NCBI GenBank assembly: GCA_977030845.1
Contig: OZ365110.1
Coordinates: forward strand, 42,904,001-42,968,000
Origin: Fimbriosthenelais zetlandica
Taxonomy: Eukaryota
Direction: 5' to 3'
Length of the DNA stretch: 64,000 bases
Made by a program: the position numbers and the translations under genes. Of the stretch, positions 17,691 to 54,430 are shown in pieces. Positions within the stretch are counted from its first letter, which is position 1. Each line of letters begins with the position of its first letter. The notes under the pieces are model-generated. The model was not told where the DNA came from. It saw only the letters and a program-made list of their open reading frames with translations, and searched no databases.

Positions 17691-20600
17691 ACCAGACCTC
17701 TGATAAAAGTCACTAAGTATACATACAAGGAGCCTGAATAAATAGATGTGTGGAAAAGCAAAGGTTAAAAAAGTCAGAACACTTTTCATGGTTAAGTTAC
17801 TTATCCTTAATGCCGGCAGTGGTATTTATGCCAGAGGAGCTAATGGGGAAGCTGTCCCCTAAACAGTGAAACCATGTACTGCCGGGTTTTTGTATTCTCA
17901 AGACATAAATCGGAGGTAATCCTCCCATAAAAAGCCCAGTAATGGATTAATATGCTTCAGTTATTGACATTTATATCTTGACCTTTCAACTGATAGATAT
18001 GTTGGTTCATGCTATTCAAGATGGTCCATTTGCCTTGGCTGTATGATGAAGTGAAATTGCCCTTGAACGGATCATTATGGGTTTTGTCTCGGCAAACATT
18101 GCCATTGAGTAGCTTTAAAAGAGGTCACAACCGCATCTGCTGCTGTCAGTGCATGCAGGGATAATCAAAATGATGCATAGGAATGTGTGCATGCCTGATG
18201 CATTTTGCTTTTAAAAATACCCCACCCTTTCCCCCTATATGTACTGTGGTCTATATTTCCCCCTTTCGGGACAGGACTTGGTTTCTGCATGGGAACCTCT
18301 AACCGCCACATATCCCATTGCGGGTAATAATTTACGTAACACCCCACCAACTAAAGGGTTACTAATGGATCATTGGAATTATGGAGATGCTTATGATGTG
18401 TTACCCAATGTCAGTAGCAAAGGTCATGCAGAGGAGTGGGCGTTCATGGCCGTATCTGTAATATTCTCCTTCCTCATTTCCCACCCAGCCCCAAGCCGGA
18501 CTCATCCGAGCTCGAGCAAAAATGGGCAAGTCCTAGGGGACAGGGAATGTTCCCCAGATGGCCGCCATTATTCCTTTGCATCCTGGGAAGGATGTCGTCA
18601 TTGGAGTGGGAGCTCGTGGTTCTGTGTTTTGTCAGTGTCCGCGTGACAACACAGGCTTCCAGGCCAGAGCGAATGGCATTATCATGGTGGCAGATGCATT
18701 AGCATTGTACCGCCATTGGTAGGCAAGAGAATGGCAAGAGAACTGCTGGCCAGTTGGTTGGTTCCTACGTACATTGTACTTAATTGACCAGTTTGTGAAA
18801 TCATGCATGACGTTGCAATATGTCTGTTTGAAGTAGGCCTAGTTCCCGTAGCAGAATGGTTTGTTTTAGAATAGGATGGGATGATATGAACTTACTGTCA
18901 ACTGTTTAAGGAAATGACTTAATATTTGTAGTGAAGTTCAAAAGCTTAATGAGGCTAAACTGTTTATATTATGGATCAGCGACGAACGGATGAACGGTTC
19001 CTTTGCTGTGTCATGGGCTTAAGCTGGCAAGCATTTTTGCCAACCTTTTGCCAATCCTTTGCCTGCCCATGGAACAATTAATATATGTTATCAGTATCGG
19101 TACTACGTCGATTTTCATCAAGTTAAACAATTCTATAGTATCCACTAGAACGACTGGAATGTACTGCCTTTAATGTCTGTAAATGGAAGTTGATGTTATT
19201 GGAGATGGAGCTCCGCCAACCGTAGACCATTCCATACATCCCTGGCACACAACATTATCTCAGAAAACATTCTCTTCCTGCATAAGGGAAAGCAATTCCC
19301 CATCCATTTTGGCATAGAACCCTCCCTAGAGAGCACGGACCCCTCAATCAAGAGACTAAATATGTATTTGATGAGGGACATCTGGGAAAAATATATTCTA
19401 AATGACTGTCTGGATGTGTCTAGTGGGACGTGTGGTACACGGTATTATGACCAGCCTCTTACAATGCACTTCTCCTTGGATGTAGACTTATTCACCATGT
19501 ATTTTACGAGTACTTTAAAACTGAATTTATACCACACATGTGTTGTGCTGCATGGGAGATATTTCCCCAGTTTACCCAGCAAATATTTTGCTTCATGCAC
19601 TGAACCAGACCGATGGAGCCGAAATTATTAGCTTGGAGAGGCAGCCTGGTGTAAAATGGATATAATATCATGTTCACCGCCGAATGGGCCTTGTGTAACT
19701 CACTCCCATTTCAGTGGGAGAGATGTGTTTGAACCTGATGACTTGGCATGTAGCGATTCAGGAAGTTAAAAAGCATTTACAAATCGAATACAGTCAATAT
19801 AACCGGTTAAATTAAGTACACCCCATAGTTTCTTTTCATACTCAGTGAAGCTGAAGGGACACTGACTAAATTTGGAAAGCGCTTGGCAGGTATAGCCCCG
19901 GCCTTTTGGGTGGGGATTGTGTGTGCATGGTGGGGTAAATATGGGATCGGGTGTTAGATTCAATGTGTAATCTGTTAAAAAGCGCCCCTGGGGGAAGCTC
20001 TAGGGATGACTGCATTCAGATGCACATAGGATGCAGCAATGGACAAGCCCAGTAGATTATCTTCACAGGGGGGTGACGCTCGGTAAGCTATGGCCTTTTT
20101 CTCTGAAAGGGATGATTCTATTTGGTTAGCTGCCACGCTAGTGTCTCTTCTCAGAGGGCTATTTCTTCTGATCCTGTCCCAAACGGCCGCTCTTAACTTC
20201 TAACTGTTGGCGCATATCGAAATCCACTTGCGATATTGTACTCATATTGCAGTCATATCAGAAAAATCAACAGATAATGGAAACCCCCATGAAATTTAGT
20301 GCCTGATAGTAGGATGACCTGAGAAATTTCCATTCAGCATAAAGCGGTGTAGTTATTATATAGGCCTACAAAATTGCCAGACCGCGTTGTTTAAAAAAAA
20401 TTAAAATCAGGTTCGGATATAATGGAAAATGAATCCATTTGACATGATATTTATTTAGAATCAGTCCACCCGATATGTTGATTGTGCCTCACAATCAATA
20501 ATAGGGAATGGTAAAATAATGATCTACTTCAGCTGCTATTTCATTTCATTTCCGAAGCTTTCAATAATAAAGGCATTGAGCCGAGGACGATTGTGTCCGT

Positions 20601-23600
20601 ATCACAATATCCCGACTCCTCCCGTCATATTCCTAGCTCCCTCCTCTGAAAGGCACAAGTCTAGAATAAAAGTGACATTGTGGATAACCAGAGCGGGACA
20701 CTAGCGATCCCACACCATGCATATTTGATACATTAATGAGCATTTGGCAGGTGACAATGGCGCGTGAATTGAGCACATTACTGGCCAAGTGCAGATTAAT
20801 TGATGTTTTGATGCAGTTAAGAGTCCAAATCGGAGCATATGTGAAAGGGTGGAGTGGAAAAAAGTCATCAAAACAGCATTGGATCGTCAAGATCAAAAAC
20901 GCTGCAATTGATGCTTGTATTGAGGCCTACCATGAACAAAGCCCATTCTCCATATACTGCTTACCATCGAGGGAGAACCAGGCCCAAAGTCAAGCCTTTA
21001 CCTCCACGCACTTCACGGTTTTTGCAGTAGTTTATAAATGTTCAGGTTATTTAAATATCAGTCCACTAAAGTGCCTATCCCTACATACAATACTCTTATC
21101 AATGCTTTACCACTTTACCATCAAGTCTTATACCCTTTTATTTGTATCTGACTTAATGATTAGCTTGTCGCTAAACACTTCCCTTAGTCGGGCTTGCACG
21201 GTAATCCCCCCCGCATTAATCCTGCCCCAGCCGCCAGCTGAAAACCCTACAACCCAGCTTTCATTTTTTTTAACCGAGATACTCCATAGGCAGGCAATTC
21301 ACAAGCTACCCACTCACGCTATCTTTAGTACGGCAGTCCAACTTAAACACATCAAACTAGGCTAGTGTTACTTGGGGCCCCCCGTCCGCCATTGTTCTTT
21401 TGTCCTGACGCTGAGGTGTACACTTTTCATTACTATCAGCAATCATGCGATATGGCACTTAGTGTGCTTATGCTTGGCCCGCCTGCCAGACTCAATGGAC
21501 GTCCAATCGTAGGTTAGTCTCTATGATTCAGACATATTGGCCAAGCTAGGCTTTGGCTATGAGGAAAAGTCTAAAGAGAGAAAGCAAGAACCTGTCGCCT
21601 GAGAGCTCCTGATTTCTGGTCAGCACTCTGATGAGACCCTAATAAACATAACCTGATTTCCCCAATTATATTATATATAGGATATCAAATGGATGTTAAA
21701 AATGTTTTAATCTCTTCAACCAGCAGTAATATATATATATATATATTGGAAATTTAAGGCAATATTTACCTAGAAATGGTCACAATACAAATTGGTAATG
21801 TTGTAGCTTTAAGAGCCTTTAGTCAGTATCTAGATTTAATATATTAATTATCATGTAGCAGCTATAAGTGCCTATAGTCAGTAGCTGAATTTTTAAGGTA
21901 TTAAGTGTGGCCTCCTGATATTGATAGCGTCAAGCGAAGGATACATCAGGTAATCTGTTAGTTTATTTATCAGGAATTATCGGTGCACCTGGCATCACCT
22001 GACTTGATGTAATAGCTGTGGGATCATGTAGATTGTCTAGAATCACACAGAAACAGGTGGAGTCTGGCACATATGCTAATAATCACCCAGATCAGCATAA
22101 TCTGTCTTAAAATTCTTCAGGGTGCCATAGCTTGATGAAAAACAGATCTTAACCGTATTAAATCAGTATCTCAACGCTCCGGGCGAAAGGTACATAAAAG
22201 ATTGGGATCACAATTAAAAGCATTTGTATGCCATAAGCCTTAAAGTTGTTTCTCTTTTGATTTTGCTTTCGCGGGGGGCTTTAATGTTATAGACTGGTAT
22301 TTAGAAGCCATTCACAAAAGACAAATGCCCGATGTATTAAATACTGTCTTTTATTTTTGCTATGGCTGACTGAGGAGTTCGTTTTACTCTTCCACATGCA
22401 TAGCCTTCTCTATAAGAAAGCGGTGACAACAATTGTGGGATTTAAAAAAAATCAAATATCGAACACTGATTTTCTTTCCGGCATTCATAGTAAATGATTG
22501 AAACATAAATCCAAAGGGAGTACTGCAAAGAATATTTTCATTCCATTTATTCCATTCATACATTCTCAGTCCTCGTGAGGGTGTTTTCCTTCCTATGCCT
22601 TTCCTCCCTTGCTGTTTTTTTTATCAGTTGAGAGTAAAATTATGAAGACAACTGCTTGCGTTAAGTGAGGATAAAATGAAATAAATGATGATGGTTAGGA
22701 TACGTGAGTAGTTTGAGAAACCCAGTGGATAAAACCAGTACATTTGACCCCATGATCTATTGTTCTTTTTTAACCACCCCCTCATTCAAAATTGCCATGA
22801 GACTTCCCAGGCGCACTGAACAGCGACCTCTCGGAAGAGACAAACAAGAACTATTTGGAATGCAACTCAAACCACATTTGTCTTGGATGAAAATTGAGTT
22901 TGCCCATTGAATCAAGAGGCACGGGGTATGGTCGGCATCCTTGATCACCCACTAATTTCCCACGTGTTTTTACCTTGACATCCGCCATCCCAGCCCCTTC
23001 CCCAACGCTGTCACATGATGAACCAAGATGGCGGCCATCACGTGGTCGCCTGAAGATGGCTGCGTGGTAGCAGCTATAGAAGCGCTCTTAACTAAAACAA
23101 TTTTTACTTGGAGAGGCTTGGCATGGAGGTCGTGTGGACTAACTCCTGGGTGGTCACATGGGAAGCATTGGGTATATACAGCATGCCATGTCCACTTAAT
23201 TGGCCTGTCCACGGTAGTTGACCTATGTCCTGTTTGCCAGATTGTCCAAATAAAATTCCCCTCTGTGCACGCAGTCTCCACCTCCTGGAAATCCCCAGCA
23301 GCTGGCTTCTCCAAGCTGTGGATAAAGATTCGAAAAAGGGAATAGAATCCATTTGATTGCCTTTCTCCCAAGCCAGTATGTTATTATTCTAAACAAAATA
23401 AAGCTAAAAAAAACCATAGAAACCTTTTGTAATTGCTGTCGTTAATGCAATTGAATCGATGCACTATTGCTACTCCCTCCAAGAAAGAACTATGTCTTTT
23501 ATATATTATACACTACAAGCAACAATGAAGCGTTTAAATATTAAGAGCTTTCGACAAAGAAAGTTCGCTTGCACGCACATTACATATCAAAGGTAATAAA

Positions 23601-26600
23601 AAGCAAACAGCGGGCCCTTCCATTTACAAAGTCAGCCATCCACTCAATATATACCCTAACCAGAAAACTTAAACCGTCTTTAGCCAGTAAAGGTGTAGGG
23701 ATTTCACTTATTCGGTGCCTTCTTTTTACCTTGGCTTGCCATGCCTATTGTAGCATGACTAGTCGTCGATTTTTAGCCGTAATGACCTCGTTACAGAAGC
23801 CAGCAAGTGATGAGCTTCTTTCATTATGGTTTATCAAATGATCCAGGACATGCATTCATTTCTTTGAGCATGCTTGTATGGCATGCCATCAAAGCATCAG
23901 GCTCGTGACACGATCCGATCGTTTAAAGTCCCTAAACACAATCATACATGATTGGTTGTATACTGCCATGCTAAGGACTTGTATGGAACAGGTAAATAAC
24001 ATTATTAAAGGCAGTTTATTCAGCCATGCCCGGCTTTAGCCTGTGCCTGTTTTACACTGGAGCTGCTTATAAAATTCTGTACGGGGCAGGCAGTTAATTG
24101 CTGGTATTATACACACTGACTGCATTTTTAAAAGCTGTGAATTGGGGATTAAATGAAATAGTGGGATGTATTCCGTGCTTATAGCACGTGAGGGAATGAG
24201 CTGACTACAAGCAGCTCCGCTGTAACTCTGTAAGTCAAGTTTGTCTTTTATAACTCCTTTTCCCTTTGAAGCCAACTTCCTTTGAAAGACCACTTTTTTA
24301 AATCATGGATTACAGGACCCTCCTGTAAATTTTACAGAAAGTAAAACGTATTTTCAGAGTTCTGATCAAACCTGTAATCAAGTGTCAATATCTTTAATAT
24401 CTAATAAGCAACTGAATTGAATTCAGATAAGATGTGAATGTGGATATCATTATCAAAGCAATTTCTTTGACAATCGGTTTATTATCATAATTAAATCACT
24501 CGCGATATTCCACAAAGATGCCTTTTAAAGATACTTCTAATGAGCACCTCATAACACAGGATGATTTATTTATGCTGCATGCCATAAGAATAAATCCATT
24601 TTGAAATCCATGAAACCCACACAATGGCCTGTATCTTTCGGCGTATATCTTATATATAGGGAATGAAGCCGTTTGGATGATGGCAGTAGAAGCCAGCTAG
24701 GATTGGGTTTTGCTATTGGCTATGACCGATAGACAGGCGCATTTATCCATTGATCCGGTTAGTGATTAGGTGTTTGTTATCTTTTTTTTTGACGATATTG
24801 ATCTGCAGTGCAGCCTCAATGATCTGATCCATCTTTTATGATTTATCGATTGTCCTGCTCTGGTAAACATACAATATTACTTTTTATAAGGCAATGACGT
24901 TTGCGTCTGAGAGCATTTCAGTCGAGGATATATCCCAGTCTGACATTTTTTTGGTGTCATTCGGGTTAACTTTTAACTTCATATTGATTTCTTTATCCTG
25001 AATTACCAGAGGCAAATAAGGGATCAATATCAAATGGTATGGGGAATTTTTTATCATATAAAACCATTGTTCCACTCGAGGGTCGGAGTGGTTTTAATTG
25101 CAGGCAATTAGTTTTAAAACAGGCAATTGAAGTACATTTAATCAAGGGCTTCTGTATATTACTCCTGTCCTTCAGGGGTCTGTCTCATAACAGAGGGCTT
25201 GTTTCATAATATATTTAAACATTATATTAATCAATAGGACGTAGACCTATGGTTGAATCTTTCTTATGGTACCATTCCCTTGTCTCTAAGAACTCTGAGT
25301 TAGGCCATATGAGCAAAGGACCATGATAGTCAAGGTGTTACATATATGGAGGGTCCCTCAACATCTTTGCATATGGAAATCAGCCCCCGAGGGGGATCTT
25401 GCTTTCATGGTCTCAAGTGAAAGTGTTTAGCGTATTTACAGAGACACAATGCAACCAAGGAGGCCCCGGGCCTCCCCAAGGAACTGTGTCAAGTGTTAGT
25501 ATTCCTCTGCTCTCCGATAGCACTTAGCATAATGGAATATGAGATTGAGTGTGTTACAGTGACGTGGTACTGTGAACGGGGGAGGCTGGCAGTCCCAGAC
25601 ATAACATGGCCATTACCATGCCCTACCGTAAGAGCCACTGCCTTGGATAGGACACCCTTGTGGATGTTACTCCTGGCACGTTAGGCGTGTCACCTACGGG
25701 ATGGGTAACTCACCAAGGCCTATAACCCTTTACCCACACTCATGGGCTGGTGCACAGAGCTTCTCAAGAAGTATGTCCCCCTCCCTTAGTGATTAATGCA
25801 TTGTCTTTTATTTTGCATGAGTCTCCTGACAGGCCTCCCCATCTGGCGCCCTAATGGAATTGGATTTTTGATTGAGTTTTCATTCCAGGCGATGTTTGTC
25901 AGGATAACTAATTAATTAGGCTTCGTCAGTCCGACTAGCATGGTCTAGGCAAAATGCATACATCACACATCCTAGTTACAGCCTAAACCTTTTATCCTAT
26001 TAAGAAAGAAATTAGCCTTGGTGGAGGGGCGTGGAGTTTCTATTCATTACAGAATGACATTATGGTGGGCGGTAAGAGATCGGCTTCTTCAGACCAAGAC
26101 GCCACTATAGATCTTTTATTATTTCCTTAACTAATGCTTAGACAGCAGCCACAATCTCTTAATCCAGGAAGATTGACATGGCCACCAACAAGTTGGTAAC
26201 TGTTGCATTTCTGCCATCCTGTCTTCTTGCCGAGATAACCATAAGAATCTGAACATTCCAGGCTATTCTCATTGTAAGCTTTCTAGGTTTTTGTTGTGTC
26301 TCAATATCTTGGCATGGCCATTTAGAATATTTGCCAGAAGCATTGTACAACATTTTTATGTACTATTTAGAACTTCCCTGTTGATATGTCCATTTTCCAT
26401 ATACTACTTAGGCCTACACAAGGTCATAAAGGTCCCATTTTGATCACAATTCGCATCGATAATAGGTTTAGTGATACCCGATACCTACCAAGTGCTCCAA
26501 TAATAGCACATCCTTTCTTTACCAGCCCCAATGTAACTTTTCTATATACTACTTACACTAATTGTACTAGTAGTATAGGGAAAATGTTCCTATATCCTGG

Positions 26601-43612: not shown

Positions 43613-44178
43613 CATGTCATACACACCATTCTATCTCACCATAGCACATTCAACTTGTAACAATTAACCATTTTTTCAGGTGATTTAGTCCACTACTGTG
43701 GCCCTCGCCCTCCCTCTAGTGTTGAAGTGAGGAGTTTGGGAGGCATGGCGGTGTTTACAAAGCAGACAAGTATACACAAGGTCAAGGTGATCTATAATGA
43801 TATTTACGAAGACGGGTCTCTTCCCAAGGTGAGTGTGTTTCCCTTATTTACTACTGTTAAAATTAATGTGCTTGTGTGGCCATTTATGTGATGGTTTGGA
43901 TGATGGAGAGCGTAGGAGTCCAGTCACTATTACACAGTGGATCGTGATTTGTTTATCACAGGTCATGTCAAATACCCGTTGACAGTGATTGTCTCACATC
44001 TTCTCCATGATGTGAGCTTGGAGTCTCTGTTCTCGATTTCAAGCAGCCACAGGCCCATCAATCTGAAACGCAAATTGAAAATAATACTGAATAAATACAT
44101 AATATATTATATATTGTGAGAATCGAGGCAAGCACTACCCACACCGTCCAGATTTTCAATGGGTTATTATTCCTAGAA
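43613..44178 (-). repeat. Linker L, inverted, internally deleted and more diverged copy (L0)
   Basis: 43613-~44065 is the reverse complement of ~46725-47255, and ~44110-44178 is the reverse complement of ~46329-46395. Confidence 0.85.
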
Positions 44179-45110
44179 TACCTGGAAAATGCATCCATTT
44201 AACTCTCAATTCTCAAACATTTCCTTGTGTACCCTCATCCCTTGAAATCCCTGCATTATTTTATCTATTTTTACAGGTGCTGCGAGTTTGTATAACGTCC
44301 GATATGGTAATGGTTCCTCCTCTTCGATCCATGGCTGTATCGGGATCCACTGACATACACTATGCATTGTTTACAAGACGGCTGACCACCACCACGCACG
44401 GCCACTGACCAGCAGATATACCTATCGTCTACCTCCTCCTACTCCTTCTACTCACCTTTACAAAGAAGTCTTTCTTTCCTGACTGGATACTAAAGCTGGC
44501 AAAGTAATCAAAGCCTGAGATATAGCCTCCGTAATCCCGCGGTATTCATCTTGTATGTCCAAATGGTCAAGATTCAATAAAAACAATAAAGCTACATTTG
44601 TCCCATGATTCATTGCGCAGCCGGGCGCTCACCTACTTCCGGCTCTCACGACTGAAATAAAGCTAAACATGAAATAGAGGAGGGTGTCATTTTTCGTCGG
44701 ACAAGGACGTGAACAATCTGTGTCACGACTCTGATTTCTTAAATCGTTAATATCTCGGCAACCACTGGGTCTTGATTCAAAATGAAAAATGAAAAATCTT
44801 AGTTGGGAAAGTCTCTAAAGGGTGGTATAGGTTACAAGTGCTAAAAGTGCTTCTAAAAATTTCGAATTTCAAAATGTACCCAATTTTCACACCGAGCTCA
44901 GATCGCATACTCAGTCTCACTAGTTCCTCAAATTGCCGTCCCACTCCGAGTGGCGCCCTAGTCGATGGAGGCCGATGTCCATGGGACAAGCCAGCCGGGT
45001 GGGAAAGGCAAGCTAGCTCCCATATCCCCCGCCTCTGAGGCGCCCCAAGCGGAAAACCAGAGTATTAGGCGTATTATAATAATACATGGATTAAGACCAT
45101 TCAATGTGTG
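44179..45110 (-). repeat. Arm A, reverse copy 1
   Basis: Starts TACCTGGAAAATGC; reverse complement of the forward arms throughout. Confidence 0.9.
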
Positions 45111-45206: not shown

Positions 45207-45493
45207 GGAGCTAGCTTGGTAGGCCTACGGACGTCCGCCCTTGGCTTTCCTACCCGGCTGGCTTGTACCATGAGCATCGGCCACCAACGACGAGGGCGCC
45301 ACTTTCACGGTAATTTGTGTAACGAGTGAGGTAGAGTGTGCGATCCGAGCTCGGTGTAATAATTGGCCATATTTTGAAATTCGAAATTTCTACAAGCACA
45401 GGCCTATAATTATGGTCGAGGCCTTGTATGGTTAGTTATGGGAATGACCACTGAGGGCGCCACTTCCATAGCTACTCCGTTCTTCCAGATCTG
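45207..45493 (+). repeat. Extra truncated, diverged arm start (45207-45399) plus a second spacer S (~45412-45493)
   Basis: GGAGCTAGCTTGG...GCGATCCGAGCTCGGTGT...TTTTGAAATTCGAAATTT, then a return to GAGGCCTTGTATGGTTAGTTATGGG...GAGGGCGCCAC. Confidence 0.85.
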
Positions 45494-46328
45494 CGGGAGC
45501 TAGCTTGGTCCACTGGCTTGTACCATAGGGGCATCAGCCATCACCGACTAGGGCGCCACTCGGAGTCGGACGGCAATTTGAGGAACTAGTGAGTCTGAGT
45601 ATGCGATCCGAGCTCGGTGTGAAAATTGGGTACATTTTGAAATTCGGAATTTTTAGAAGCACTTTTAGCACTTGTAACCTATACCACCCTTTAGGTACTT
45701 TCCCAACTAAGATTTTTCATTTTGAATTTTGAATAAAAACCCAGTGGTTGCCGAGATATTAACGATTTAAGAAATCAGAGTCGTGACACAGATTGTTCAC
45801 GTCCTTGTCCGACGAGAAATGACACCCTCCTCTATTTCATGTTTAGCTTGATTTCAGTCGTGAGAGCCGGAAGTAGGTGAGCGCCCAGCTGCGCAATGAA
45901 TCATGGGACAAATGTAGCTTTATTGTTTTTATTGAATCTTGACCATTTGGACATACAAGATGAATACCGCGGGATTCCGGAGGCTATATCTCAGGCTTTG
46001 ATTACTTTGCCAGCTTTAGTATCCAGCCAGGAAGGAAAGACTTCTTCGTAAAGGTGAGTAGAAGGAGTAGGAGGAGGTAGACGATAGGTATATCTGCTGG
46101 TCAGTGGCCGTGCGTGGTGGTGGTCAGCCGTCTTGTAAATGCATAGTGTATGTCAGTGGGTCTGGATACAGCCATGGATCTAGAGGTGAAACCATTACCA
46201 TATCTTGGACATTATACAAAGTTGCAGCACCTGGAAAAATAGATAAAATAATTCTGGGATTTCAAGGGATGAGTGTGCACAAGAAAATGTTTGAAAATTG
46301 GGAGTTAAATGTGTGTATTTTCCAGGTA
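45494..46328 (+). repeat. Arm A, forward copy 2
   Basis: Runs from CGGGAGCTAGCTTGG to TTTTCCAGGTA. Confidence 0.9.
45867..45917. promoter_or_regulatory. ETS-like site plus ZNF143/Staf(SBS)-like site, present in all six arms (44591-44642, 45867-45917, 47976-48027, 48975-49016, 51051-51102, 52043-52084)
   Basis: CCGGAAGT (GCGGAAGT in two copies) lies ~17 bp from TCCCATGATTCATTGCG, which is close to the SBS consensus TCCCA-NN-ATGCAYYGCG and is preceded by GCTACA. Motif match only; binding is not shown. Confidence 0.5.
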
Positions 46329-46729
46329 TTCTAGAAATAATAACTCATCGATAATCTGGAGGGTGTGGTTAATTTTGCCTCTACTCTCACAATATACTCT
46401 ACACATGTATTTAGTAACTTATTGAGATTTGCTCTGAATTTCTAGGGATCCTAACACCATGAAGGCATGGGAAGCATTTGGTAGAGTTGGGGAGTCGGCT
46501 CAGAATGGCACTGTAGTTAACGCTATAGTGCCTATACTGACAGGTAACCTATATGTGTATATAAAACCTTCTAGTCAGCTTAATGATTGAAACGCAAATT
46601 GAAGATATATAGGCCTAATAGTTTGTTTTAATTACTTAACACCAAATCAAAAATAGACAATTTATTCATTATTTTACCATGTCGTTTTGCTTTTCTTTTT
46701 ATAATTTTTTTTATAATTTTTTTCTACAG

Positions 46730-46809
46730 ATTGATGTGTCAGTGGCTGCTGAAAATCGAGGACAGAGACTCCTAACTCACATCATAGAGAAAATGCGAGA
46801 CAATCACAG
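46730..46809 (+). other. Candidate 80-nt exon in L, plus strand (IDVSVAAENRGQRLLTHIIEKMRDNH); second copy 49782-49861
   Basis: Strong acceptor TTTTTTTCTACAG| and weak donor CAG|GTATTT. Open in phase 0 in L1 and L2; the acceptor is deleted in L3; in-frame stop in L0. Confidence 0.3.
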
Positions 46810-46993
46810 GTATTTGACATGACCAGTAATACACAAATCACGATCTCTTGTGTTGATGGACAAGGCCGGACTAATGTTAACAACATGTGGCATGGTGACT
46901 GGACTCCTACGCTCTCCATCATCCAACCCATCACATAAATGGCCACACAAGCACATTAATTTTAACAGTAGTGAATAAGGGAAACACACTCAC

Positions 46994-47182
46994 CTTAGGA
47001 AGAGACCCGTCTTGGTAAATATCCTTAGATCACCTGTGACCTTGTGTACACATGCCAGCATTGTACACACCGCCGTGCCTCCCACACTCCTCACTTCAAC
47101 ACTAGAGGGAGGGTGAGGGCCGCAGTAGCAGACTAAATCACCATTGGTCATTCTCTCAGCGTTTCCATGGTGTTGGAAAATC
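46994..47182 (-). other. Candidate 189-nt exon in L, minus strand (IFQHHGNAERMTNGDLVCYCGPHPPSSVEVRSVGGTAVCTMLACVHKVTGDLRIFTKTGLFL); copies 50046-50234 (-), 53105-53298 (-, 194 nt), 43680-43828 (+, 149 nt)
   Basis: Acceptor ACCATTTTTTCAG| and donor AAG|GTGAGT are conserved in all four copies. Open and a multiple of 3 in two copies; length-altered in the other two. Confidence 0.4.
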
Positions 47183-47585
47183 CTGAAAAAATGGTTAATT
47201 AATTGTAACAAATTGAATGTGCCATGTTGAGATATAGAATGGTGTGTATGACATGTTGCGCTCCTATTGCGTCGGATATAAAATCGGATTAATGTGTTCC
47301 AGGCTTTAGGCCTATGTGTTACAGTAGAATCTGATAGCCAGCCGATAGCCAGCATATGTATAACATTGTGATGGGGGTAGTGTGTGAGACATAAATGATG
47401 AAAAGAACTCAAGTTCGAACTAAGGACTGTGGTCAGTATTGTGTACTCTATACGTACAAGGCCGTCCCTTGTCCATGTGCATACATGTACGTGTGTATAT
47501 ATATTGAAGTCTGTAGGCAAATACAAAAGACTGAATGTGATGAGAAATAATAATATGTCCGGAAAAAACTGAAGCTTAATTGATA

Positions 47586-48436
47586 TACCTGGAAAATGCA
47601 TCCAGTTAACTCTCAATTTTCAAACATTTCCTTGTGTACCCTCATCCCTTAATTGTTTTATCTATTTTTCCAGGTGCTGCGACTTTGCATAATGTCCAAG
47701 ATATGGTAATGGTTCCAGCTCTTCGATCCATGGCTGTATCGGGATCCACTGGCATACACTATGCATTGTTTACAAGACGGCTGACCACCACCACGCACGG
47801 CCACTGACCTGCAGATATACCTACCACCTACCTCCTCCTACTCACCTTTAGTAGAAGTTTCTCCTTCCTGACTTCCAAAGCTGGCAAAGTAATCAAAGCC
47901 TGTGATATAGCCTCCTTAATCCCGCGGTATTCATCTTGTATGTTCAAGTGGAAGAGATTCAATAAAAACAATAAAGCTACATTTGTCCCATGATTCATTG
48001 CGCAGCTGGGCGCTCACCTACTTCCGGCTCTCACGACTGAAATCAAGCTAAACATGAAATAGAGGAGGGTGTCATTTTTCGTCGGACAAGGACGTGCACA
48101 ATCTGTGTCACGACTCTGATTTCTTAAATCGTTAATATCTCGGCAACCACTGGGTCTTTATTCAAAATTCAAAATGAAAAGTCTTAGTTGGGAAAGTCTC
48201 TAAAGGGTGGTATAGGTTGGAAGTGCTAAAAGTGCTTCTAAAGATTTCGAATTTCAAAATGTACCCAATTTTCACACCGAGCTCAGATCGCATACTCAGT
48301 TTCACTAGTTCCTCAAATTGCCGCCCGACTCCGAGTGGCGCCCTAGTCGGTGGTGGTCAATGCCCATGGTACAAGCCAGCCGGATGGGAAAGCCTAGCTA
48401 GCTCCCGTATCCCCCGCCTTTGAGGCGCCGCAAGCG
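47586..48436 (-). repeat. Arm A, reverse copy 2
   Basis: Starts TACCTGGAAAATGC and ends GGCGCCGCAAGCG. Confidence 0.9.
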
Positions 48437-48526
48437 AAGCCTCGTATGGTAAGTTATGGGCAATGACCACTGAGGGCGCCACTTTCATAGCTACTCCGTT
48501 CTGCCTGATCCTATTATGTTAGGACG
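48437..48526 (+). repeat. Spacer S at the palindrome centre (homologues at ~45111-45206, ~45412-45493, ~51565-51645)
   Basis: GCCTCGTATGGTAAGTTATGGGCAATGACCACTGAGGGCGCCACTTTC, in the same orientation in all copies. Confidence 0.85.
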
Positions 48527-49435
48527 CACATTGAATGGTCTTATTAATATAATACACCTACACTCCGCTTGTGGCGCCTGAGAGCCGTGGGATACGGGAG
48601 CTAGCTTGGCTTTCCCACCCGGCTGGCTTGTACCATGGACATCGGCCACCACCGACTATGGCGCCACTCGGAGTCGGACGGCAATTTGAGGAACTAATGG
48701 GTCTGAATATGCGATCCGAGCTCGGTGTGAAAATTGGGTACATTTTGAAATTCGAAATCTTTAGAAGCACTTTTAGCACTTCCAACCTATACCACCCTTT
48801 AGAGACTTTTCCAACTAAGATTTTTCATTTTTCATTTTGAATAAAGACCCAGTGGTTGCCGAGATATTAACGATTTAAGAAATCAGAGTCGTGACACAGA
48901 TTGTTCACGTCCTTGTCCGACGAGAAATGACACCCTCCTCTATTTCATGTTTAGCTTTATTTCAGTCGTGAGAGGCGGAAGTAGGTGAGCGCCCAGCTGC
49001 GCAATGAATCATGGGACAAATGAAGCTTTATTGCTTTTATTGAATCTTGACCACTTGAACATACAAGATGAATGCCGCAGGATAACGGAGGCTATATCAC
49101 AGGCTTTGATTACTTTGCCAGCTTTGGAAATCAGGAAGGAGAAACTTCTACTAAAGGTGAGTAGAAGGAGTAGGAGGAGGTAGACGATAGGTATATCTGC
49201 TGGTCAGTGGCCGTGCGTGGTGGTGGTCAGCCGTCTTGTAAACAATGCATAGTGTATGTCAGTGGGGCCCGATACAGCCATGGATCGAAGAGGTGGAACC
49301 AATACCATATCTTGGACATTATACAAAGTCGCAGCACCTGGAAAAATAGATAAAATAATTCAGGGATTTCAAGGGATGAGTGTGCACAAGAAAATGTTTG
49401 AAAATTGGGAGTTAAATGTGTGTATTTTCCAGGTA
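48527..49435 (+). repeat. Arm A, forward copy 3
   Basis: Runs from CACATTGAATGGTC to TTTTCCAGGTA. Confidence 0.9.
49004..49156 (+). other. Candidate exon in arm A ending in AAG|GTGAGT; 51 open codons MNHGTNEALLLLLNLDHLNIQDECRRITEAISQALITLPALEIRKEKLLLK in this copy
   Basis: The donor is intact in all six arms (exon ends 44456-, 46053+, 47846-, 49156+, 50915-, 52224+). The frame from this ATG is open to the donor in the short-form copies 49004-49156 and 52072-52224, but hits TAA 2 nt before the donor in 45896-46051. The ATG lies inside the SBS-like motif, so coding status is doubtful. Confidence 0.3.
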
Positions 49436-50635
49436 TTCTAGAAATAATAACTCATCGATAATCTGGAGGGTGTGTTTATTTTTGCCTCTAATCTCACAAT
49501 ATACTCTACACATGTTTTTAGTAACTTATTGAGATTTGCTCTGAATTTCTAGTGATCCTAACTCCATGAAGGCATGGGAAGCATTTGGTAGAGTGGGGGA
49601 GTCGGCTCAGAATGGCACTTTAGTTAACGCTATAGTGCCTATACTGACAGGTAACCTATACGTGTATATAAAACCTTCTAGTCAGCTTAATGATTGAAAC
49701 GCAAATTGACAATAGACAATTTATTCATGATTTTACCATGTCGTTTTGCTTTTCTAAGTGATTTTTATGCTTTTTCTACAGATTGATATGTCTGTGGCTG
49801 CTGAAAATCGAGGACAGAGACTCCTAACTCACATCATAGAGAAAATGCGAGACAATCACGGGTATTTGAGATGACCAGTAATACACAAATCACGATCTCT
49901 TGTGTTGATGGACAAGGCCGGACTAAAGAAAACAACATGTGGCATAGTGACTGGACTCCTACGCTCCCCATCATCCAAACCATCACATAAATTGCCACAC
50001 AAGCACATTGATTTTAACAGTAGTAAATAAGAGAAACACACTCACCTTAGGAAGAGACCCGTCTTGGTAAATATCCTTAGATCACCTGTGATCTTGTGTA
50101 CACATGCCAGCATTGTAAACACCGCCGTGCCTCCCACACTCCTCACTTCAACACCAGAGGGAGGGAGGGGGCCGCAGTAGCGGACGAAATCACCATTGGT
50201 CATTCTCTCAGCGTTTCCACGGTGTTGGAAAATCCTGAAAAAATGGTTAATTAATTTTTACAAATTGAATGTGCCATGTTGAGATATAGCATGGTGTGTA
50301 TGACATGTTGCGCTCCTATTGCGCCGGATATAAAATCGGATTAATGTGTTCCAGGCTTTAGGCCTATGTGATACAGTAGAATCTGATAGCCAGCCGATAG
50401 CCGACATGTGTATAACATTGTGATGGGGGTAGTGTGTGAGACATAAATGATTAAAAGAACTCAAGTTCGGACTACGGACTGTGGTCAGTATTGTGTACTC
50501 TATACGTACAAGGCCGTCCCTTGTCCATGTGCATACATGTACGTGTGTATATAATGAAGTCTGTAGGCAAATACAAAAGACTGAATGTGATGAGAAATAA
50601 TAATATGTCCAGAAAACACTGAAGCTTATTTGATA
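49436..50635 (+). repeat. Linker L, copy 2 (1200 bp)
   Basis: Collinear with the other L copies, with small deletions. Confidence 0.9.
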
Positions 50636-51564
50636 TACCTGGAAAATGCATCCAGTTAACTCTCAATTTTCAAACATTTCCTTGTGCACACTCATCCCTT
50701 GAAATCCCTGAATTATTTTATCTATTTTTCCAGGTGCTGCGAATTTGTATAATGTCCAAGATATGGTAATGGTTCCACCTCTTCGATCCATGGCTGTATC
50801 GGGATCCACTGGCATACACTATGCATTGTTTACAAGACGGCTGACCACCACCACACACGGCCACTGACCAGCAGATATACCTACCACCTACCTCCTCCTA
50901 CTCCTTCTACTCACCTTTACAAAGAAGTTTCTTCTTCCTGGCTGGATACTAAAGCTGGCAAAGTAATCAAAGCCTGAGATATAGCCTCCGTAATCCCGCG
51001 GTATTCATCTTGTATGTCGAAATGGTCAAGATTCAATAAAAAACAATAAAGCTACATTTGTCCCATGATTCATTGCGCAGCTGGGCGCTCACCTACTTCC
51101 GGCTCTCACGACTGAAATCAAGCTAAACATGAAATAGAGGAGGGTGTCATTTCTCGTCGGACAAGGACGTGCACAATCTGTGTCACGACTCTGATTTCTT
51201 AAATCGTTAATATCTCAGCAACCACTGGGTCTTTATTCAAAATGAAAAATGAAAAATCTTAGTTGGGAAAGTCTCTAAAGGGTGGTATAGGTGAGAAGTG
51301 CTAAAAGTGCTTCTAAAAATTTCGAATTTCAAAATGTACCCAATTTTCACACCGAGCTCAGATCGCATACTCAGTCTCACTAGTTCCTCAAATTGCCGCC
51401 CGACTCCGAGTGGCGCCCTAGTCGGTGGTGGTCAATGCCCATGGTACAAGCCAGCCGGATGGGAAAACCAAGCTAGCTCCCGTATCCCCCGCCTTTGAGG
51501 CGCCCCAAGCGGAAAACCCGAGTATTAGGCGTAATATAATAATTCATGGATTAAGACCATTCAA
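50636..51564 (-). repeat. Arm A, reverse copy 3
   Basis: Starts TACCTGGAAAATGC and ends GACCATTCAA. Confidence 0.9.
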
Positions 51565-51645: not shown

Positions 51646-52503
51646 GGAGCTAGCTTGGTACGGACGTCCGCTCTTGGCTTTCCTACCCGGCTGGCTTGTA
51701 CCATGGGCATTGACCACCATCGACTAGGGCGCCACTCGGAGTCGGGCGGCAATTTGAGGAACTAGTGAGTCTGAGTATGCGATCCGAGCTCGGTGTGAAA
51801 ATTGGGTACATTTTGAAATTCGAAATTTTTAGAAGCACTTTTAGCACTTGTAACCTATACCACCCTTTAGAGACTTTCCCAACTAAGATTTTTCATTTTT
51901 CATTTTGAATAAAGACCCAGTGGTTGCCGATATATTAACGATTTAAGAAATCAGAGTCGTGACACGGATTGTGCACGTCCTTGTCCGACGAAAAATGACA
52001 CCCTCCTCTATTTCATGTTTAGCTTTATTTCAGTCGTGAGAGGCGGAAGTAGGTGAGCGCCCGGCTGCGCAATGAATCATGGGACAGATGTAGCTTCATT
52101 GCTTTTATTGAATCTTGACCACTTGAACATACAAGATGAATGCCGCAGGATAACGGAGGCTATATCACAGGCTTTGATTACTTTGCCAGCTTTGGAAGTC
52201 AGGAAGGAGAAATGTCTACTAAAGGTGAGTAGAAGGAGTAGGAGGAGGTAGACGATAGGTATATCTGGTGGTCAGTGGCCGTGCGTGGTGGTGGTCAGCC
52301 ATCTTGTAAACAATGCATAGTGTATGCCAGTGGGTCCCGATACAGCCATGGATCGAAGAGGTGGAACCATTACCATATCTTGGACATTATACAAAGTCGC
52401 GGCACCTGGAAAAATAGATAAAATAATTCAGGGATTTCAAGGAATGAGTGTGCAAAAGGAAATGTTTGAAAATTGGGAGTTAAATGTGTGTATTTTCCAG
52501 GTA
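51646..52503 (+). repeat. Arm A, forward copy 4
   Basis: Runs from GGAGCTAGCTTGG to TTTTCCAGGTA. Confidence 0.9.
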
Positions 52504-53687
52504 TTCTAGAAATAATAACTCCTCGATAATCTGGAGGGTGTGTTTATTTTTGCCTCTATTCTATATTCTACACATGTTTTTAGTAACTTATTGAGATTTG
52601 CTATGAATTTTTAGGGATCCTAACTCTATGAAGGCATGGGAAGCATTTGGTAGAGTGGGGGAGTCGGCTCAGAATGGCACTGTAGTTAACGCTATAGTGC
52701 CTATACTGAGAGGTAACCTATACATGTATATAAACCTTTTAGTCAGCTTAATGATTTGAAACGCAGATTGAGGATATATAATAGTTTGTTTTAATTACTT
52801 TATACCAAATCAACAATAGACAATTTATTCATGATTTCACCATGTCGTTTTGCTTTTCTTAGTGATTTTTTATATAAGACTCCTAACTCACATCATAGAG
52901 AAAATGCGAGACAATCACGGGTATTTGAAATGACCAGTAATACACAAATGACGATCTCTTGTGTTGATGGACAAGGCCGGACTAATGAAAACAACATGTG
53001 GCATAGTGACTGGACTCCTACGCTCTCCATCATCCAAATCATCACATAAATGGCCACACAAGCACATTAATTTTAACAGTAGTTAATAAGAGAAACACAC
53101 TCACCTTGGGAAGAGACCCGTCTTGGTAAATATCCTTAGTTCACATGTGACCTTGTGTAGGCTACACATGCCTGCACTGTAAACACCACAACGCCTCCTA
53201 CACTCCTCACTTCAACACCAGAGGGAGGGAGGGGGCCGCAGTAGCTGACTAAATCACCATTGGTCATAATATCAGCGTTTCCACTCTGTTGCAAAATCCT
53301 GAAAAAATGGTTAATTAATTGTTACAAATTGAATGTGCCATGTTGAGATATAGAATGGTGTGTATGACATGTTGCGCTCCCGTAGGCCTTTATCATAATT
53401 AGACCTATGTGTAACAGTAGCCTCTGATAGCCAGCAGATAGCCAACAACTGTATAACATTCATGTGAAGAGGGTAGTGTGTGAGCCATAAATGATGAAAA
53501 GCACTCAGGCTCGGCCCAAGGACTGTGGTTAGTATTGTGTACTCTATACGTACAGGGCCGTCCCTTGTCCATGTGCATACATGTACGTGCGAATATATCA
53601 TGAAGTCTGTAAGCAAATACAAAAGATAGATCGACTGAATGTGATGAGAAATAATAATATGACTAAAACACTGAAGCTTAATTGATA
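52504..53687 (+). repeat. Linker L, copy 3; ends in unique sequence instead of a reverse arm
   Basis: Ends ...AAGCTTAATTGATA then TTCACATAC, whereas L1 and L2 continue ...TTGATA then TACCTGG. Confidence 0.9.
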
Positions 53688-53925: not shown

Positions 53926-54200
53926 CTGGAAAATAAAATTAGAAACGTGAATAAATTTCACTGTATTTTCTCAGATTTTTACATATTCAAAACTTAATTT
54001 ACATATGCTACAGATCTGAAGCCTACCTACTCACTACATTATATTTAATAACATTAGATTTTTGTAGCTACTTCTTACGAAACCCTTCTTTGGCTCTACA
54101 GAGTAGGCAAGGTTAATTAGGTGCATGGTTTTAAGAACATACAAACAAAGGGTACAAACAAAATTTAAAAAATGTAGGCATATGCCCGGGGGCATGAATT

Positions 54201-54430
54201 TAGACGAGTCTGATATCCCAATATATTCCCTATAGTAGACGAGTTTGATATCCCAATACATTCCCTATAGTAGACGAGTCGGATATGCCAATACATTCCC
54301 TATAGTAGACGAGTGTGATATCCCAATACATTCTCTATAGTAGACGAATATGATATCCCAATATATTCTCTAAGTAAACGAGTCTGATATCCCAAACATT
54401 CTGAAAAGTAGACGAGTCTTATATCTCATA
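54201..54430 (+). repeat. 35-bp minisatellite, ~6.5 copies (TAGACGAGTCTGATATCCCAATACATTCCCTATAG)
   Basis: Units start at 54201, 54236, 54271, 54306, 54341, 54375 and 54409, decaying to the right. Confidence 0.95.

What the first reader, a model, noticed from the sequence alone, without database searches (positions are those of the whole stretch)
47586..49435. Signature of arm-to-arm gene conversion across the tight palindrome
Seen: reverse arm 2 and forward arm 3, which face each other across S, uniquely share TTCGAAATCTTTAG and CACTTCCAACC (48211-48250 and 48751-48790); the other arms have AATTTTTAG and CTTGTAACC or CTTCTCACC. They also share the 5-nt-shorter exon end, while the facing pair rev1/fwd2 shares the long form. 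Elsewhere variants sort by orientation: forward arms have GTGTGT near the L end and TCCGAGCTCGG, reverse arms have GGATGC and TCTGAGCTCGG (the latter seen in three reverse arms; fwd3 also differs at other sites). Established: palindrome arms can homogenise by gene conversion, as in primate Y palindromes. Inference: patchy conversion tracts overlie an older forward/reverse split.
Basis: partly seen in the sequence, partly recalled or inferred. Interest (0 to 1): 0.7.

Follow-up and report, generated by a model that had tools for sequence, protein, structure and literature searches.

The report
Short sequence exchange between palindrome arms
Two facing copies of a repeated promoter-like segment in an invertebrate chromosome share one small patch of changes found nowhere else in the genome, most likely because one copy overwrote 25-92 letters of the other; this is real but ordinary repeat-family behaviour.

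Summary
The scan noted this same stretch before (s1-196172, s1-196129). The core observation holds. They alone carry AAATCTTTAG and CACTTCCAACC. Both T>C changes are derived: the other 4 arms and 21 paralogues keep T. The 43-mer that carries them occurs exactly twice in the 447-Mb assembly. Tree-only simulation gives P = 0.0005 for this. Over the whole arm the two are not sisters (AU p = 0.002), since rev2 groups with rev3 and fwd2 with fwd3. A local exchange of 25-92 bp, probably rev2 to fwd2, is therefore the best reading.

A second head-to-head pair of the same family, at 40.946 Mb, has its own exclusive patch.

The "5-nt-shorter exon end" is not evidence for this exchange. Fwd3 and about 7 of 21 paralogues also have it, and rev2's copy sits in a block closest to a paralogue 1 Mb away. 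A GENECONV-style run test does not single out this pair (p = 0.09).

The array as a whole is a mosaic (PHI p ≤ 1e-4). Exchange there is not confined to partner arms, which remain 6-7% diverged, unlike Y-chromosome palindromes. No reads were available, so a polishing artefact is not excluded.

The parts
47585..48436 (-). rev2, left arm of the tight palindrome P2. It is a rev-type arm: it abuts the distal end of L1 and has no L of its own.
   Evidence: Self-BLAST and inverted-repeat pairs; six-arm alignment.
48437..48562 (+). Spacer S2 (~123-126 nt), made of element E (48437-48504) plus X (48505-48563). Both are the upstream extension of the forward arm, as in single-copy paralogues.
   Evidence: BLAST of the three spacers against each other and of E and X against the paralogue loci.
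It is a fwd-type arm followed by L2.
   Evidence: p-distance to rev2 is 0.068 (58 substitutions and 2 indels over 855 aligned bases).
48718..48809 (+). Maximal exchanged tract in fwd2. This is the longest difference-free interval between the two arms.
   Evidence: Flanking differences lie at 48717 and 48810.
48759..48783 (+). Minimal tract in fwd2. 48759 T>C and 48783 T>C are exclusive to the two arms. 48782 G>C is shared with rev3 and L012.
   Evidence: Polarised site table; alignment view; 43-mer found exactly twice in the genome.
48193..48284 (-). Mirror of the maximal tract in rev2. The derived sites are at 48243, 48220 and 48219.
   Evidence: Coordinates derived from the two 43-mer hits (48209-48251 minus, 48751-48793 plus), with no indel in between.
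49099..49157 (+). Short-form 'exon end' in fwd2, just before a GTGAGT donor-like site. It is 5 nt shorter than the long form.
   Evidence: The short form is shared by rev2, fwd2, fwd3 and 4-7 of 21 paralogues, so it is not specific to P2.
44092..45053 (-). rev1. It is positionally a fwd-type arm, because an inverted L (43613-44065) follows it.
45513..46413 (+). fwd1.
50635..51513 (-). rev3, sister of rev2 in the whole-arm tree.
51673..52562 (+). fwd3, sister of fwd2 in the whole-arm tree (support 98/89).
49437..50634 (+). L2, the 1.2-kb segment between fwd2 and rev3. Its distal part is U1-like, so unit 2 is a mosaic.
   Evidence: Windowed distances; max-chi2 breakpoint at 50032-50049, p = 4e-4.

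Best explanation
The stretch is the head-to-head junction of two diverged copies (arms) of a promoter-like/first-exon-like segment. This segment belongs to a multi-copy family confined mostly to 37-54 Mb of one chromosome. The two arms descend from different, older arm lineages: rev2 with rev3, and fwd2 with fwd3.

After rev2 and rev3 separated, the rev2 lineage gained two T>C changes next to an older G>C. A short non-crossover exchange then copied 25-92 bp holding all three onto the facing arm about 540 bp away (rev2 to fwd2). The likely route is intrachromatid gene conversion through a short heteroduplex, possibly with GC-biased repair.

Such events recur in this family but are rare. They do not homogenise the arms. 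They sit on top of wider mosaicism made by unequal crossing-over and conversion among direct and inverted copies.

Shown: the exclusive shared derived alleles, their improbability under a tree, and the local conflict with the whole-arm tree. Inferred: the direction of transfer, the enzymology and the GC bias.
For: - Exclusive derived alleles at 48759 and 48783, and 48782 shared only with rev3 and L012.
- The 43-mer haplotype occurs exactly twice in 447 Mb.
- AliSim tree-only null, 2000 replicates: P = 0.0005 for this pair, 0.0015 for any of the 3 partner pairs, 0.012 for any of 13 non-sister pairs.
- The AU test rejects rev2+fwd2 as sisters over the whole arm (difference in log-likelihood 48.7, p = 0.0024). 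So the patch conflicts with its flanks.
- The patch lies in the longest identical interval of the pair.
- Independent second case: the head-to-head pair L019/L026 at 40.946 Mb shares an exclusive ACGGA...AACC patch (3 substitutions plus 1 insertion). Its 27-mer occurs exactly twice in the genome. P(>=2 of 7 head-to-head pairs show this) = 0.0005.
- All 5 exclusive partner-shared substitutions are AT>GC, against 31.5% of 184 private substitutions (p = 0.003).
- Recombination across the arms in general: PHI p <= 1e-4.
Against: - Only three sites carry the signal, in one small patch.
- A GENECONV-style run test is not significant for this pair (p = 0.09).
- In the quartet rev2, rev3, fwd2, fwd3, 2 sites support the partner grouping, 1 supports the other discordant grouping, and about 18 support the tree.
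- The arms are 6.8% diverged, and before the event the flanking perfect identity was only about 41 and 26 bp. That is short for canonical homologous recombination.
- The GC-bias test rests on two events and was chosen after seeing the data.
- No reads could be laid on the region (no runs listed), so the assembly there is unverified.
Confidence: 0.6

Rival explanations
1. The patch comes from replication template switching (quasi-palindrome correction). The nascent strand briefly copied the opposite arm, perhaps in a hairpin formed by the 850-nt arms around the 123-nt spacer. This made a short stretch of the imperfect inverted repeat perfect without homologous recombination.
For: - A clustered multi-nucleotide change makes the arms complementary over a short tract.
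- Flanking perfect identity is only tens of bp and the arms are 6.8% diverged, which disfavours canonical recombination.
- The mechanism is documented for inverted repeats (PMC5453318, PMC8604942).
- The second patch, in L019/L026, is also a tight cluster of 3 substitutions and 1 insertion within 16 bp.
Against: - The copied sites are about 540 bp apart (P2) and 1149 bp apart (L019/L026). From my own recollection, not checked in the cited papers, described template-switch events are much shorter-range than this.
- The all-AT>GC direction is what biased heteroduplex repair predicts, not template switching.
- Sequence alone cannot separate the two mechanisms.
Confidence: 0.17
2. The patch is an assembly or polishing artefact. 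Reads from one arm were used to correct the other inside the 92-bp stretch where the arms are otherwise identical, so the shared variants are not real in one arm.
For: The patch sits in the longest identical interval of the two arms, which is where mis-mapping is easiest. No reads could be obtained to check.
Against: - The identical interval is only 92 bp, so reads longer than that would span a distinguishing site at 48717 or 48810.
- The arms are otherwise kept 6.8% apart.
- A second palindrome 2 Mb away shows the same kind of patch, including an insertion.
- 48782 C is also present in rev3, which fits a real lineage history.
Confidence: 0.1
3. The patch is a relic rather than a recent transfer. 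The two arms of P2 were once a homogeneous inverted duplicate. Almost all of both arms was later overwritten by conversion or unequal crossing-over from rev3-like and fwd3-like direct copies, leaving 25-92 bp of the original shared sequence.
For: The array is heavily mosaic: PHI p <= 1e-4, and 57% of informative site pairs are incompatible. Unit 2 is a U1/U3 mosaic.
Against: - It needs several large tracts on both sides in both arms, against one short tract.
- 48782 C is shared with rev3, so the patch looks like rev-lineage sequence sitting in fwd2.
- The forward/reverse split predates the paralogous clusters at 41.9 and 43.98 Mb.
Confidence: 0.08
4. Independent parallel mutations at hypermutable sites produced the same changes in both arms.
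For: Homoplasy is common in this alignment.
Against: - Both sites are invariant T in all 25 other copies and are not CpG sites.
- Simulation with among-site rate variation gives P = 0.0005.
- A third concordant site lies between the two.
Confidence: 0.02

Closest known systems
Arm-to-arm gene conversion in primate Y- and X-chromosome palindromes (PMC3723533, PMC8981503, PMC8600007)
   Same: Inverted-repeat arms around a spacer. Derived variants are shared between the facing arms against the wider phylogeny. The direction of change is compatible with GC-biased conversion.
   Different: - The arms here are about 0.85 kb. From my own recollection, the sex-chromosome arms run from kilobases to over a megabase.
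- The spacer here is 123 nt.
- Arm identity is 93%, not above 99% (PMC3723533, PMC8981503). One tract of <=92 bp is seen, not continual homogenisation.
- The setting is a multi-copy family of an invertebrate chromosome; whether that chromosome is an autosome was not checked.
- Non-partner copies exchange just as much.
Concerted evolution of tandem and segmentally duplicated families by unequal crossing-over and ectopic conversion
   Same: Mosaic units, incompatible site patterns, a middle unit that is a hybrid of its neighbours, and blocks closest to paralogues 1 Mb away.
   Different: Homogenisation is weak: copies stay 4-10% apart. The units contain inverted as well as direct copies.
Maintained long inverted repeats of divergent or convergent gene pairs in C. 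elegans (PMC1803023)
   Same: Head-to-head and tail-to-tail homologous segments with short spacers in an invertebrate, with conversion invoked to explain them.
   Different: Those repeats are nearly perfect and involve protein-coding pairs. Here the arms are diverged, and no coding function could be shown.
Short-range template-switch mutations between inverted repeats (PMC5453318, PMC8604942)
   Same: A cluster of nearby changes that makes an imperfect inverted repeat locally perfect.
   Different: The copies here are 540-1149 bp apart. From my own recollection, not checked in the cited papers, described events involve much shorter and closer repeats.

Membership tests
Palindrome arm-to-arm gene conversion (Y/X-palindrome type) | Two inverted arms flanking a unique spacer | tested here: met
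   Arms 47585-48436 and 48563-49436 with a ~123-nt spacer.
Palindrome arm-to-arm gene conversion (Y/X-palindrome type) | Arm-to-arm identity far higher than the age of the duplication predicts (>99%) | tested here: not met
   p-distance is 0.068 for P2, and 0.062-0.180 across the seven head-to-head pairs. Partner arms are never sisters, and the AU test rejects that for P2 and P3.
Palindrome arm-to-arm gene conversion (Y/X-palindrome type) | Derived variants shared by partner arms against the phylogeny of the flanks | tested here: met
   48759 and 48783 are exclusive to the two arms. P = 0.0005 under the tree-only null. L019/L026 is a second case.
Palindrome arm-to-arm gene conversion (Y/X-palindrome type) | GC-biased direction of fixed conversions | tested here: inconclusive
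   5 of 5 exclusive partner-shared substitutions are AT>GC, against a 31.5% background (p = 0.003). However, they come from only two events and the test was chosen post hoc.
Palindrome arm-to-arm gene conversion (Y/X-palindrome type) | Conversion events seen directly among haplotypes or individuals | not testable with these tools
   No sequencing runs were listed for this genome.
Statistically detectable conversion tract (GENECONV-type longest identical fragment) | Pairwise identical run longer than expected after permuting polymorphic sites | tested here: not met
   rev2-fwd2 p = 0.09. The best pairs are rev2-rev3 (p = 0.003) and rev1-fwd1 (p = 0.006), all uncorrected for 15 pairs.
Recombining (non-tree-like) repeat family | Excess of nearby compatible sites and failure of a single tree | tested here: met
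   PHI p <= 1e-4 for the six arms, 2e-4 for 11 sequences and 5e-4 for 27 sequences. 560 of 990 site pairs fail the four-gamete test. Unit 2 is a mosaic, p = 4e-4.
Template-switch (quasi-palindrome) mutation | Clustered changes that increase complementarity of nearby inverted repeats | tested here: met
   Three sites within 25 bp make 92 bp perfectly complementary.
Template-switch (quasi-palindrome) mutation | Very short range between donor and target | tested here: not met
   The copies are about 540 bp apart (P2) and 1149 bp apart (L019/L026). That described events are shorter-range is my recollection, not checked in the cited papers.

The most novel reading that the evidence does not exclude
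Head-to-head promoter-like palindromes of this family undergo recurrent, GC-biased, very short (tens of bp) arm-to-arm exchange. This happens even though the arms are 7-12% diverged and share only 20-40 bp of flanking perfect identity. If so, a short-patch exchange route would operate well below the identity thresholds usually assumed for homologous recombination. It would be promoted by the palindromic geometry, and with dozens of copies it could be measured in this genome.
Probability: 0.2. Interest if true: 0.5.

Novelty: new member of a known kind. Interest (0 to 1): 0.3.

Why it matters
The result gives a clean, polarised example of a very short exchange between diverged inverted repeats in an invertebrate, with a second independent example in the same family. 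It also shows that such exchange does not keep these palindromes homogeneous.

For anyone annotating this genome, the practical lesson is that trees of this family are unreliable over short windows. Variants such as the long and short 'exon end' are old family haplotypes that have been shuffled among copies. They are not markers of the local palindrome.

It does not open a new question. Conversion between inverted repeats and concerted evolution of arrays are both well known.

Tried and rejected
1. **Reads check.** Two run searches (window 47400-49600 and 20000-26000) listed no runs (one search was busy). Read laying was therefore not used, and the polishing-artefact rival stays open.
2. **GENECONV-style longest-run permutation test.** Not significant for rev2/fwd2 (p = 0.09). 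A hand-read triplet comparison (fwd2 against fwd3 and rev2) was uninformative, because private fwd3 changes swamp it.
3. **Short exon end as support for P2 conversion.** Rejected, because it is a family-wide haplotype and rev2's block is L009-like.
4. **A third-party donor for the patch.** Rejected, because the haplotype occurs only twice in the genome.
5. **An external donor for fwd2's complete 5' end.** The nearest other copy is only 89% identical.
6. **A single clean unequal crossover as the whole history.** Only partly fits. Unit 2 is U1-like distally and fwd3-like in the exon region. But spacers S2 and S3 differ in structure, and the left part of unit 2 is mixed.
7. **Spacer inversion by intra-palindrome crossover.** Rejected, because element E has the same orientation in all three spacers.
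8. **The fwd-L-rev module as a transposon with 850-bp terminal inverted repeats.** Not supported. The outer ends of the arms are not sharp, and single arms exist.
9. **What the arms encode.** No Rfam family was found in the window. The seven longest ORFs have no Pfam hit, and no convincing ORF lies in the array. That the 'exon' is transcribed is unproven.

Full report
**Structure**

The window is G000:C10:42904001-42968000 of a 447-Mb invertebrate assembly. Between 43.6 and 53.7 kb, six ~0.85-0.9-kb copies of one segment ("arms") alternate in orientation:

| Element | Window coordinates | Strand |
|---|---|---|
| L0inv | 43613-44065 | inverted copy of L |
| rev1 | 44092-45053 | - |
| S1 | between rev1 and fwd1 | |
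| fwd1 | 45513-46413 | + |
| L1 | 46414-47584 | + |
| rev2 | 47585-48436 | - |
| S2 | 48437-48562 | |
| fwd2 | 48563-49436 | + |
| L2 | 49437-50634 | + |
| rev3 | 50635-51513 | - |
| S3 | between rev3 and fwd3 | |
| fwd3 | 51673-52562 | + |
| L3 | to 53688 | + |

Its "rev1 / fwd2" are my rev1 and fwd1.

The arms belong to a larger family.
- A whole-genome search finds about 21 more full-length copies between 37 and 54 Mb of the same chromosome, several of them again head-to-head.
- Many partial copies (arm positions 165-562 and 735-854) lie on other chromosomes at 72-85% identity.
- The module fwd-L-rev recurs, inverted, at 43.98 Mb. A copy of [L0inv-rev1-S-fwd1-L-rev2] recurs, inverted, at 41.93 Mb.
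- The spacer of the tight palindrome (elements E and X) is the normal upstream extension of a complete forward-type arm, as seen in single-copy paralogues. Fwd1 and fwd3 lack part of that extension.

No Rfam family, Pfam domain or convincing ORF was found. The arm carries an ETS-like CCGGAAGT and a Staf/ZNF143-like motif ahead of a GTGAGT donor-like site, seen by eye in the sequence. Transcription is unproven, and no RNA runs were listed.

**Checking the observation**

The six-arm alignment and the 27-sequence family alignment confirm the following.
- Rev2 and fwd2 alone have AAATCTTTAG and CACTTCCAACC.
- Rev1, fwd1 and fwd3 have AAATTTTTAG and CTTGTAACC; rev3 has CTTCTCACC.
- The orientation-sorted variants (TCCGAGCTCGG and GTGTGT in forward arms, TCTGAGCTCGG and GGATGC in reverse arms) hold in all six arms.

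Polarising with the 21 paralogues gives the direction of change.
- 48759 T>C and 48783 T>C are derived and exclusive to rev2 and fwd2. All 25 other copies have T.
- 48782 G>C is shared with rev3 and paralogue L012.
- A pattern search finds the 43-mer haplotype exactly twice in the assembly, at the two arms.

The tract is at least 48759-48783 (25 bp) and at most 48718-48809 (92 bp). Its mirror in rev2 is 48193-48284. It is the longest difference-free interval between the two arms, which otherwise differ at 58 substitutions and 2 indels over 855 aligned bases.

**Is the patch more than chance?**

I inferred a GTR+G tree of the 27 copies and simulated 2000 alignments on it without recombination.

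| Event in the simulations | Frequency |
|---|---|
| rev2 and fwd2 share >=2 exclusive sites | 0.0005 |
| any of the three partner pairs does so | 0.0015 |
| any of the 13 non-sister pairs among the six arms does so | 0.012 |

In the real data, rev2/fwd2 is the only pair among the six arms with such sites.

Over the whole arm the tree is (rev1,(rev2,rev3)) and (fwd2,fwd3). The AU results are:
- rev2+fwd2 as sisters: rejected, p = 0.0024.
- rev3+fwd3 as sisters: rejected, p = 1.5e-5.
- rev1+fwd1 as sisters: not rejected, p = 0.12.
- the six arms as one clade: rejected, p = 0.017.

The patch therefore conflicts with its flanks, which is the signature of a local exchange. Because 48782 C belongs to the rev2/rev3 lineage and not to fwd3 or fwd1, the likelier direction is rev2 to fwd2.

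- The 5-nt-shorter "exon end" is shared by rev2, fwd2 and also fwd3, and by 4-7 of 21 paralogues. Rev3 has the long form.
- Across 49100-49268 rev2 is closest to L009, its positional counterpart 1 Mb away (0-1 differences against 2-6 to fwd2). It shares a 9-nt deletion with L009 that fwd2 lacks.
- A GENECONV-style permutation test does not single out rev2/fwd2 (p = 0.09). The best pairs are rev2-rev3 (p = 0.003) and rev1-fwd1 (p = 0.006), all uncorrected.
- Exchange is not special to partner arms. Of 45 informative sites, 560 of 990 pairs fail the four-gamete test, and PHI gives p <= 1e-4.
- Variants shared by non-partner inverted pairs are about as frequent per pair as those shared by partners (hand count).
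- Unit 2 is itself a mosaic. It is fwd3-like around the exon and U1-like in distal L2 and the following rev arm (max-chi2 p = 4e-4). This fits unequal crossing-over or conversion between direct repeats, but not one clean event, because S2 and S3 differ in structure.

**A second, independent case**

I listed all two-copy exclusive site patterns in the family. This shows that L019(-)/L026(+), a head-to-head pair at 40.946 Mb, shares an exclusive ACGGA...AACC patch. The pair is not sister in the tree and is 11.5% diverged. The patch holds three substitutions and one insertion within 16 bp. Its 27-mer occurs exactly twice in the genome, 1149 bp apart.

Under the tree-only simulations, two or more of the seven head-to-head pairs showing >=2 exclusive sites has P = 0.0005. 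All five exclusive partner-shared substitutions are AT>GC, against 31.5% of 184 private substitutions (p = 0.003). This is suggestive of GC-biased repair, but it rests on two events and the test was post hoc.

**Mechanism**

The best-supported reading is a short non-crossover exchange between the facing arms, that is, intrachromatid gene conversion.

The main rival is replication template switching across the imperfect palindrome (PMC5453318, PMC8604942). It would produce the same sequence outcome, and the short flanking identity (about 41 and 26 bp before the event) and the 6.8% divergence favour it. Against it are the 540-1149-bp distances between the copies and the AT>GC direction.

A polishing artefact cannot be excluded without reads. 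It is made less likely by the short (92-bp) identical interval, by the second locus, and by the lineage-consistent 48782 C.

A "relic of former identity" model needs many more events. Parallel mutation is rejected by the simulation.

**Comparison with known systems and verdict**

The logic matches arm-to-arm conversion in primate sex-chromosome palindromes (PMC3723533, PMC8981503, PMC8600007) and maintained inverted repeats in C. elegans (PMC1803023). The defining feature of those systems, near-identity of the arms, is tested here and not met: partner arms are 6-18% diverged.

This is therefore an occasional short-tract exchange in a reticulately evolving repeat family, not a homogenising palindrome. 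It is real, modestly interesting, and a new member of a known kind.

Noticed in passing
G000:C10:40945902-40947731 (loci L019/L026); patch copies at 40946282-40946308 (-) and 40947431-40947457 (+): A second head-to-head palindrome of the same family carries its own exclusive arm-to-arm patch, ACGGA...AACC (3 substitutions and 1 insertion). The patch occurs only twice in the genome.
   Followed up: yes
window 49900-50250, with equivalents in L1 (~46850-47200) and L3: The L segment holds, on the minus strand, a CCAAT-box-like sequence followed by a CTAAG|GTGAGT donor-like site. This patch is also conserved in the dispersed copies (L positions 472-808, 72-75% identity). It may be a second, antisense promoter/first-exon module.
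   Followed up: no
window 45226-45512: Spacer S1 contains a truncated extra copy of the start of a forward arm (45226-45399) and a second copy of element E (45412-45509). So palindrome 1 has a 460-nt composite spacer.
   Followed up: partly
loci L028-L031 (C10:45.91 Mb, C25:30.93 Mb, C10:46.95 Mb, C1:14.85 Mb) and many others: The arm core and parts of L are collinear with a dispersed repeat present on several chromosomes. Copies are 92-96% identical to one another over 0.85-1.5 kb but only 72-85% identical to the C10 arms. This is a recently amplified element that shares the promoter-like core; its type was not identified.
   Followed up: partly
paralogue L009 (C10:41929695-41930580), aligned to window ~48790: L009 has a 6-nt insertion that turns CCTATACC into CCTATAGGCCTACC. 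This is a TAGGCCTA palindrome at a TA site, the motif that other notes of this scan read as transposon excision scars.
   Followed up: no
window 54166-54375: A 35-nt tandem repeat of about 5-6 copies (TAGACGAGTNTGATATCCCAATAYATTCYCTATAG) lies just beyond the end of the array.
   Followed up: no
window 48643-48678 equivalents in fwd3, rev2 and rev3: Fwd3 shares three derived alleles with rev2 and rev3 near the inner end of the arm. This is a candidate rev3-to-fwd3 tract in palindrome 3, but a few paralogues carry the same alleles, so it is not exclusive.
   Followed up: partly
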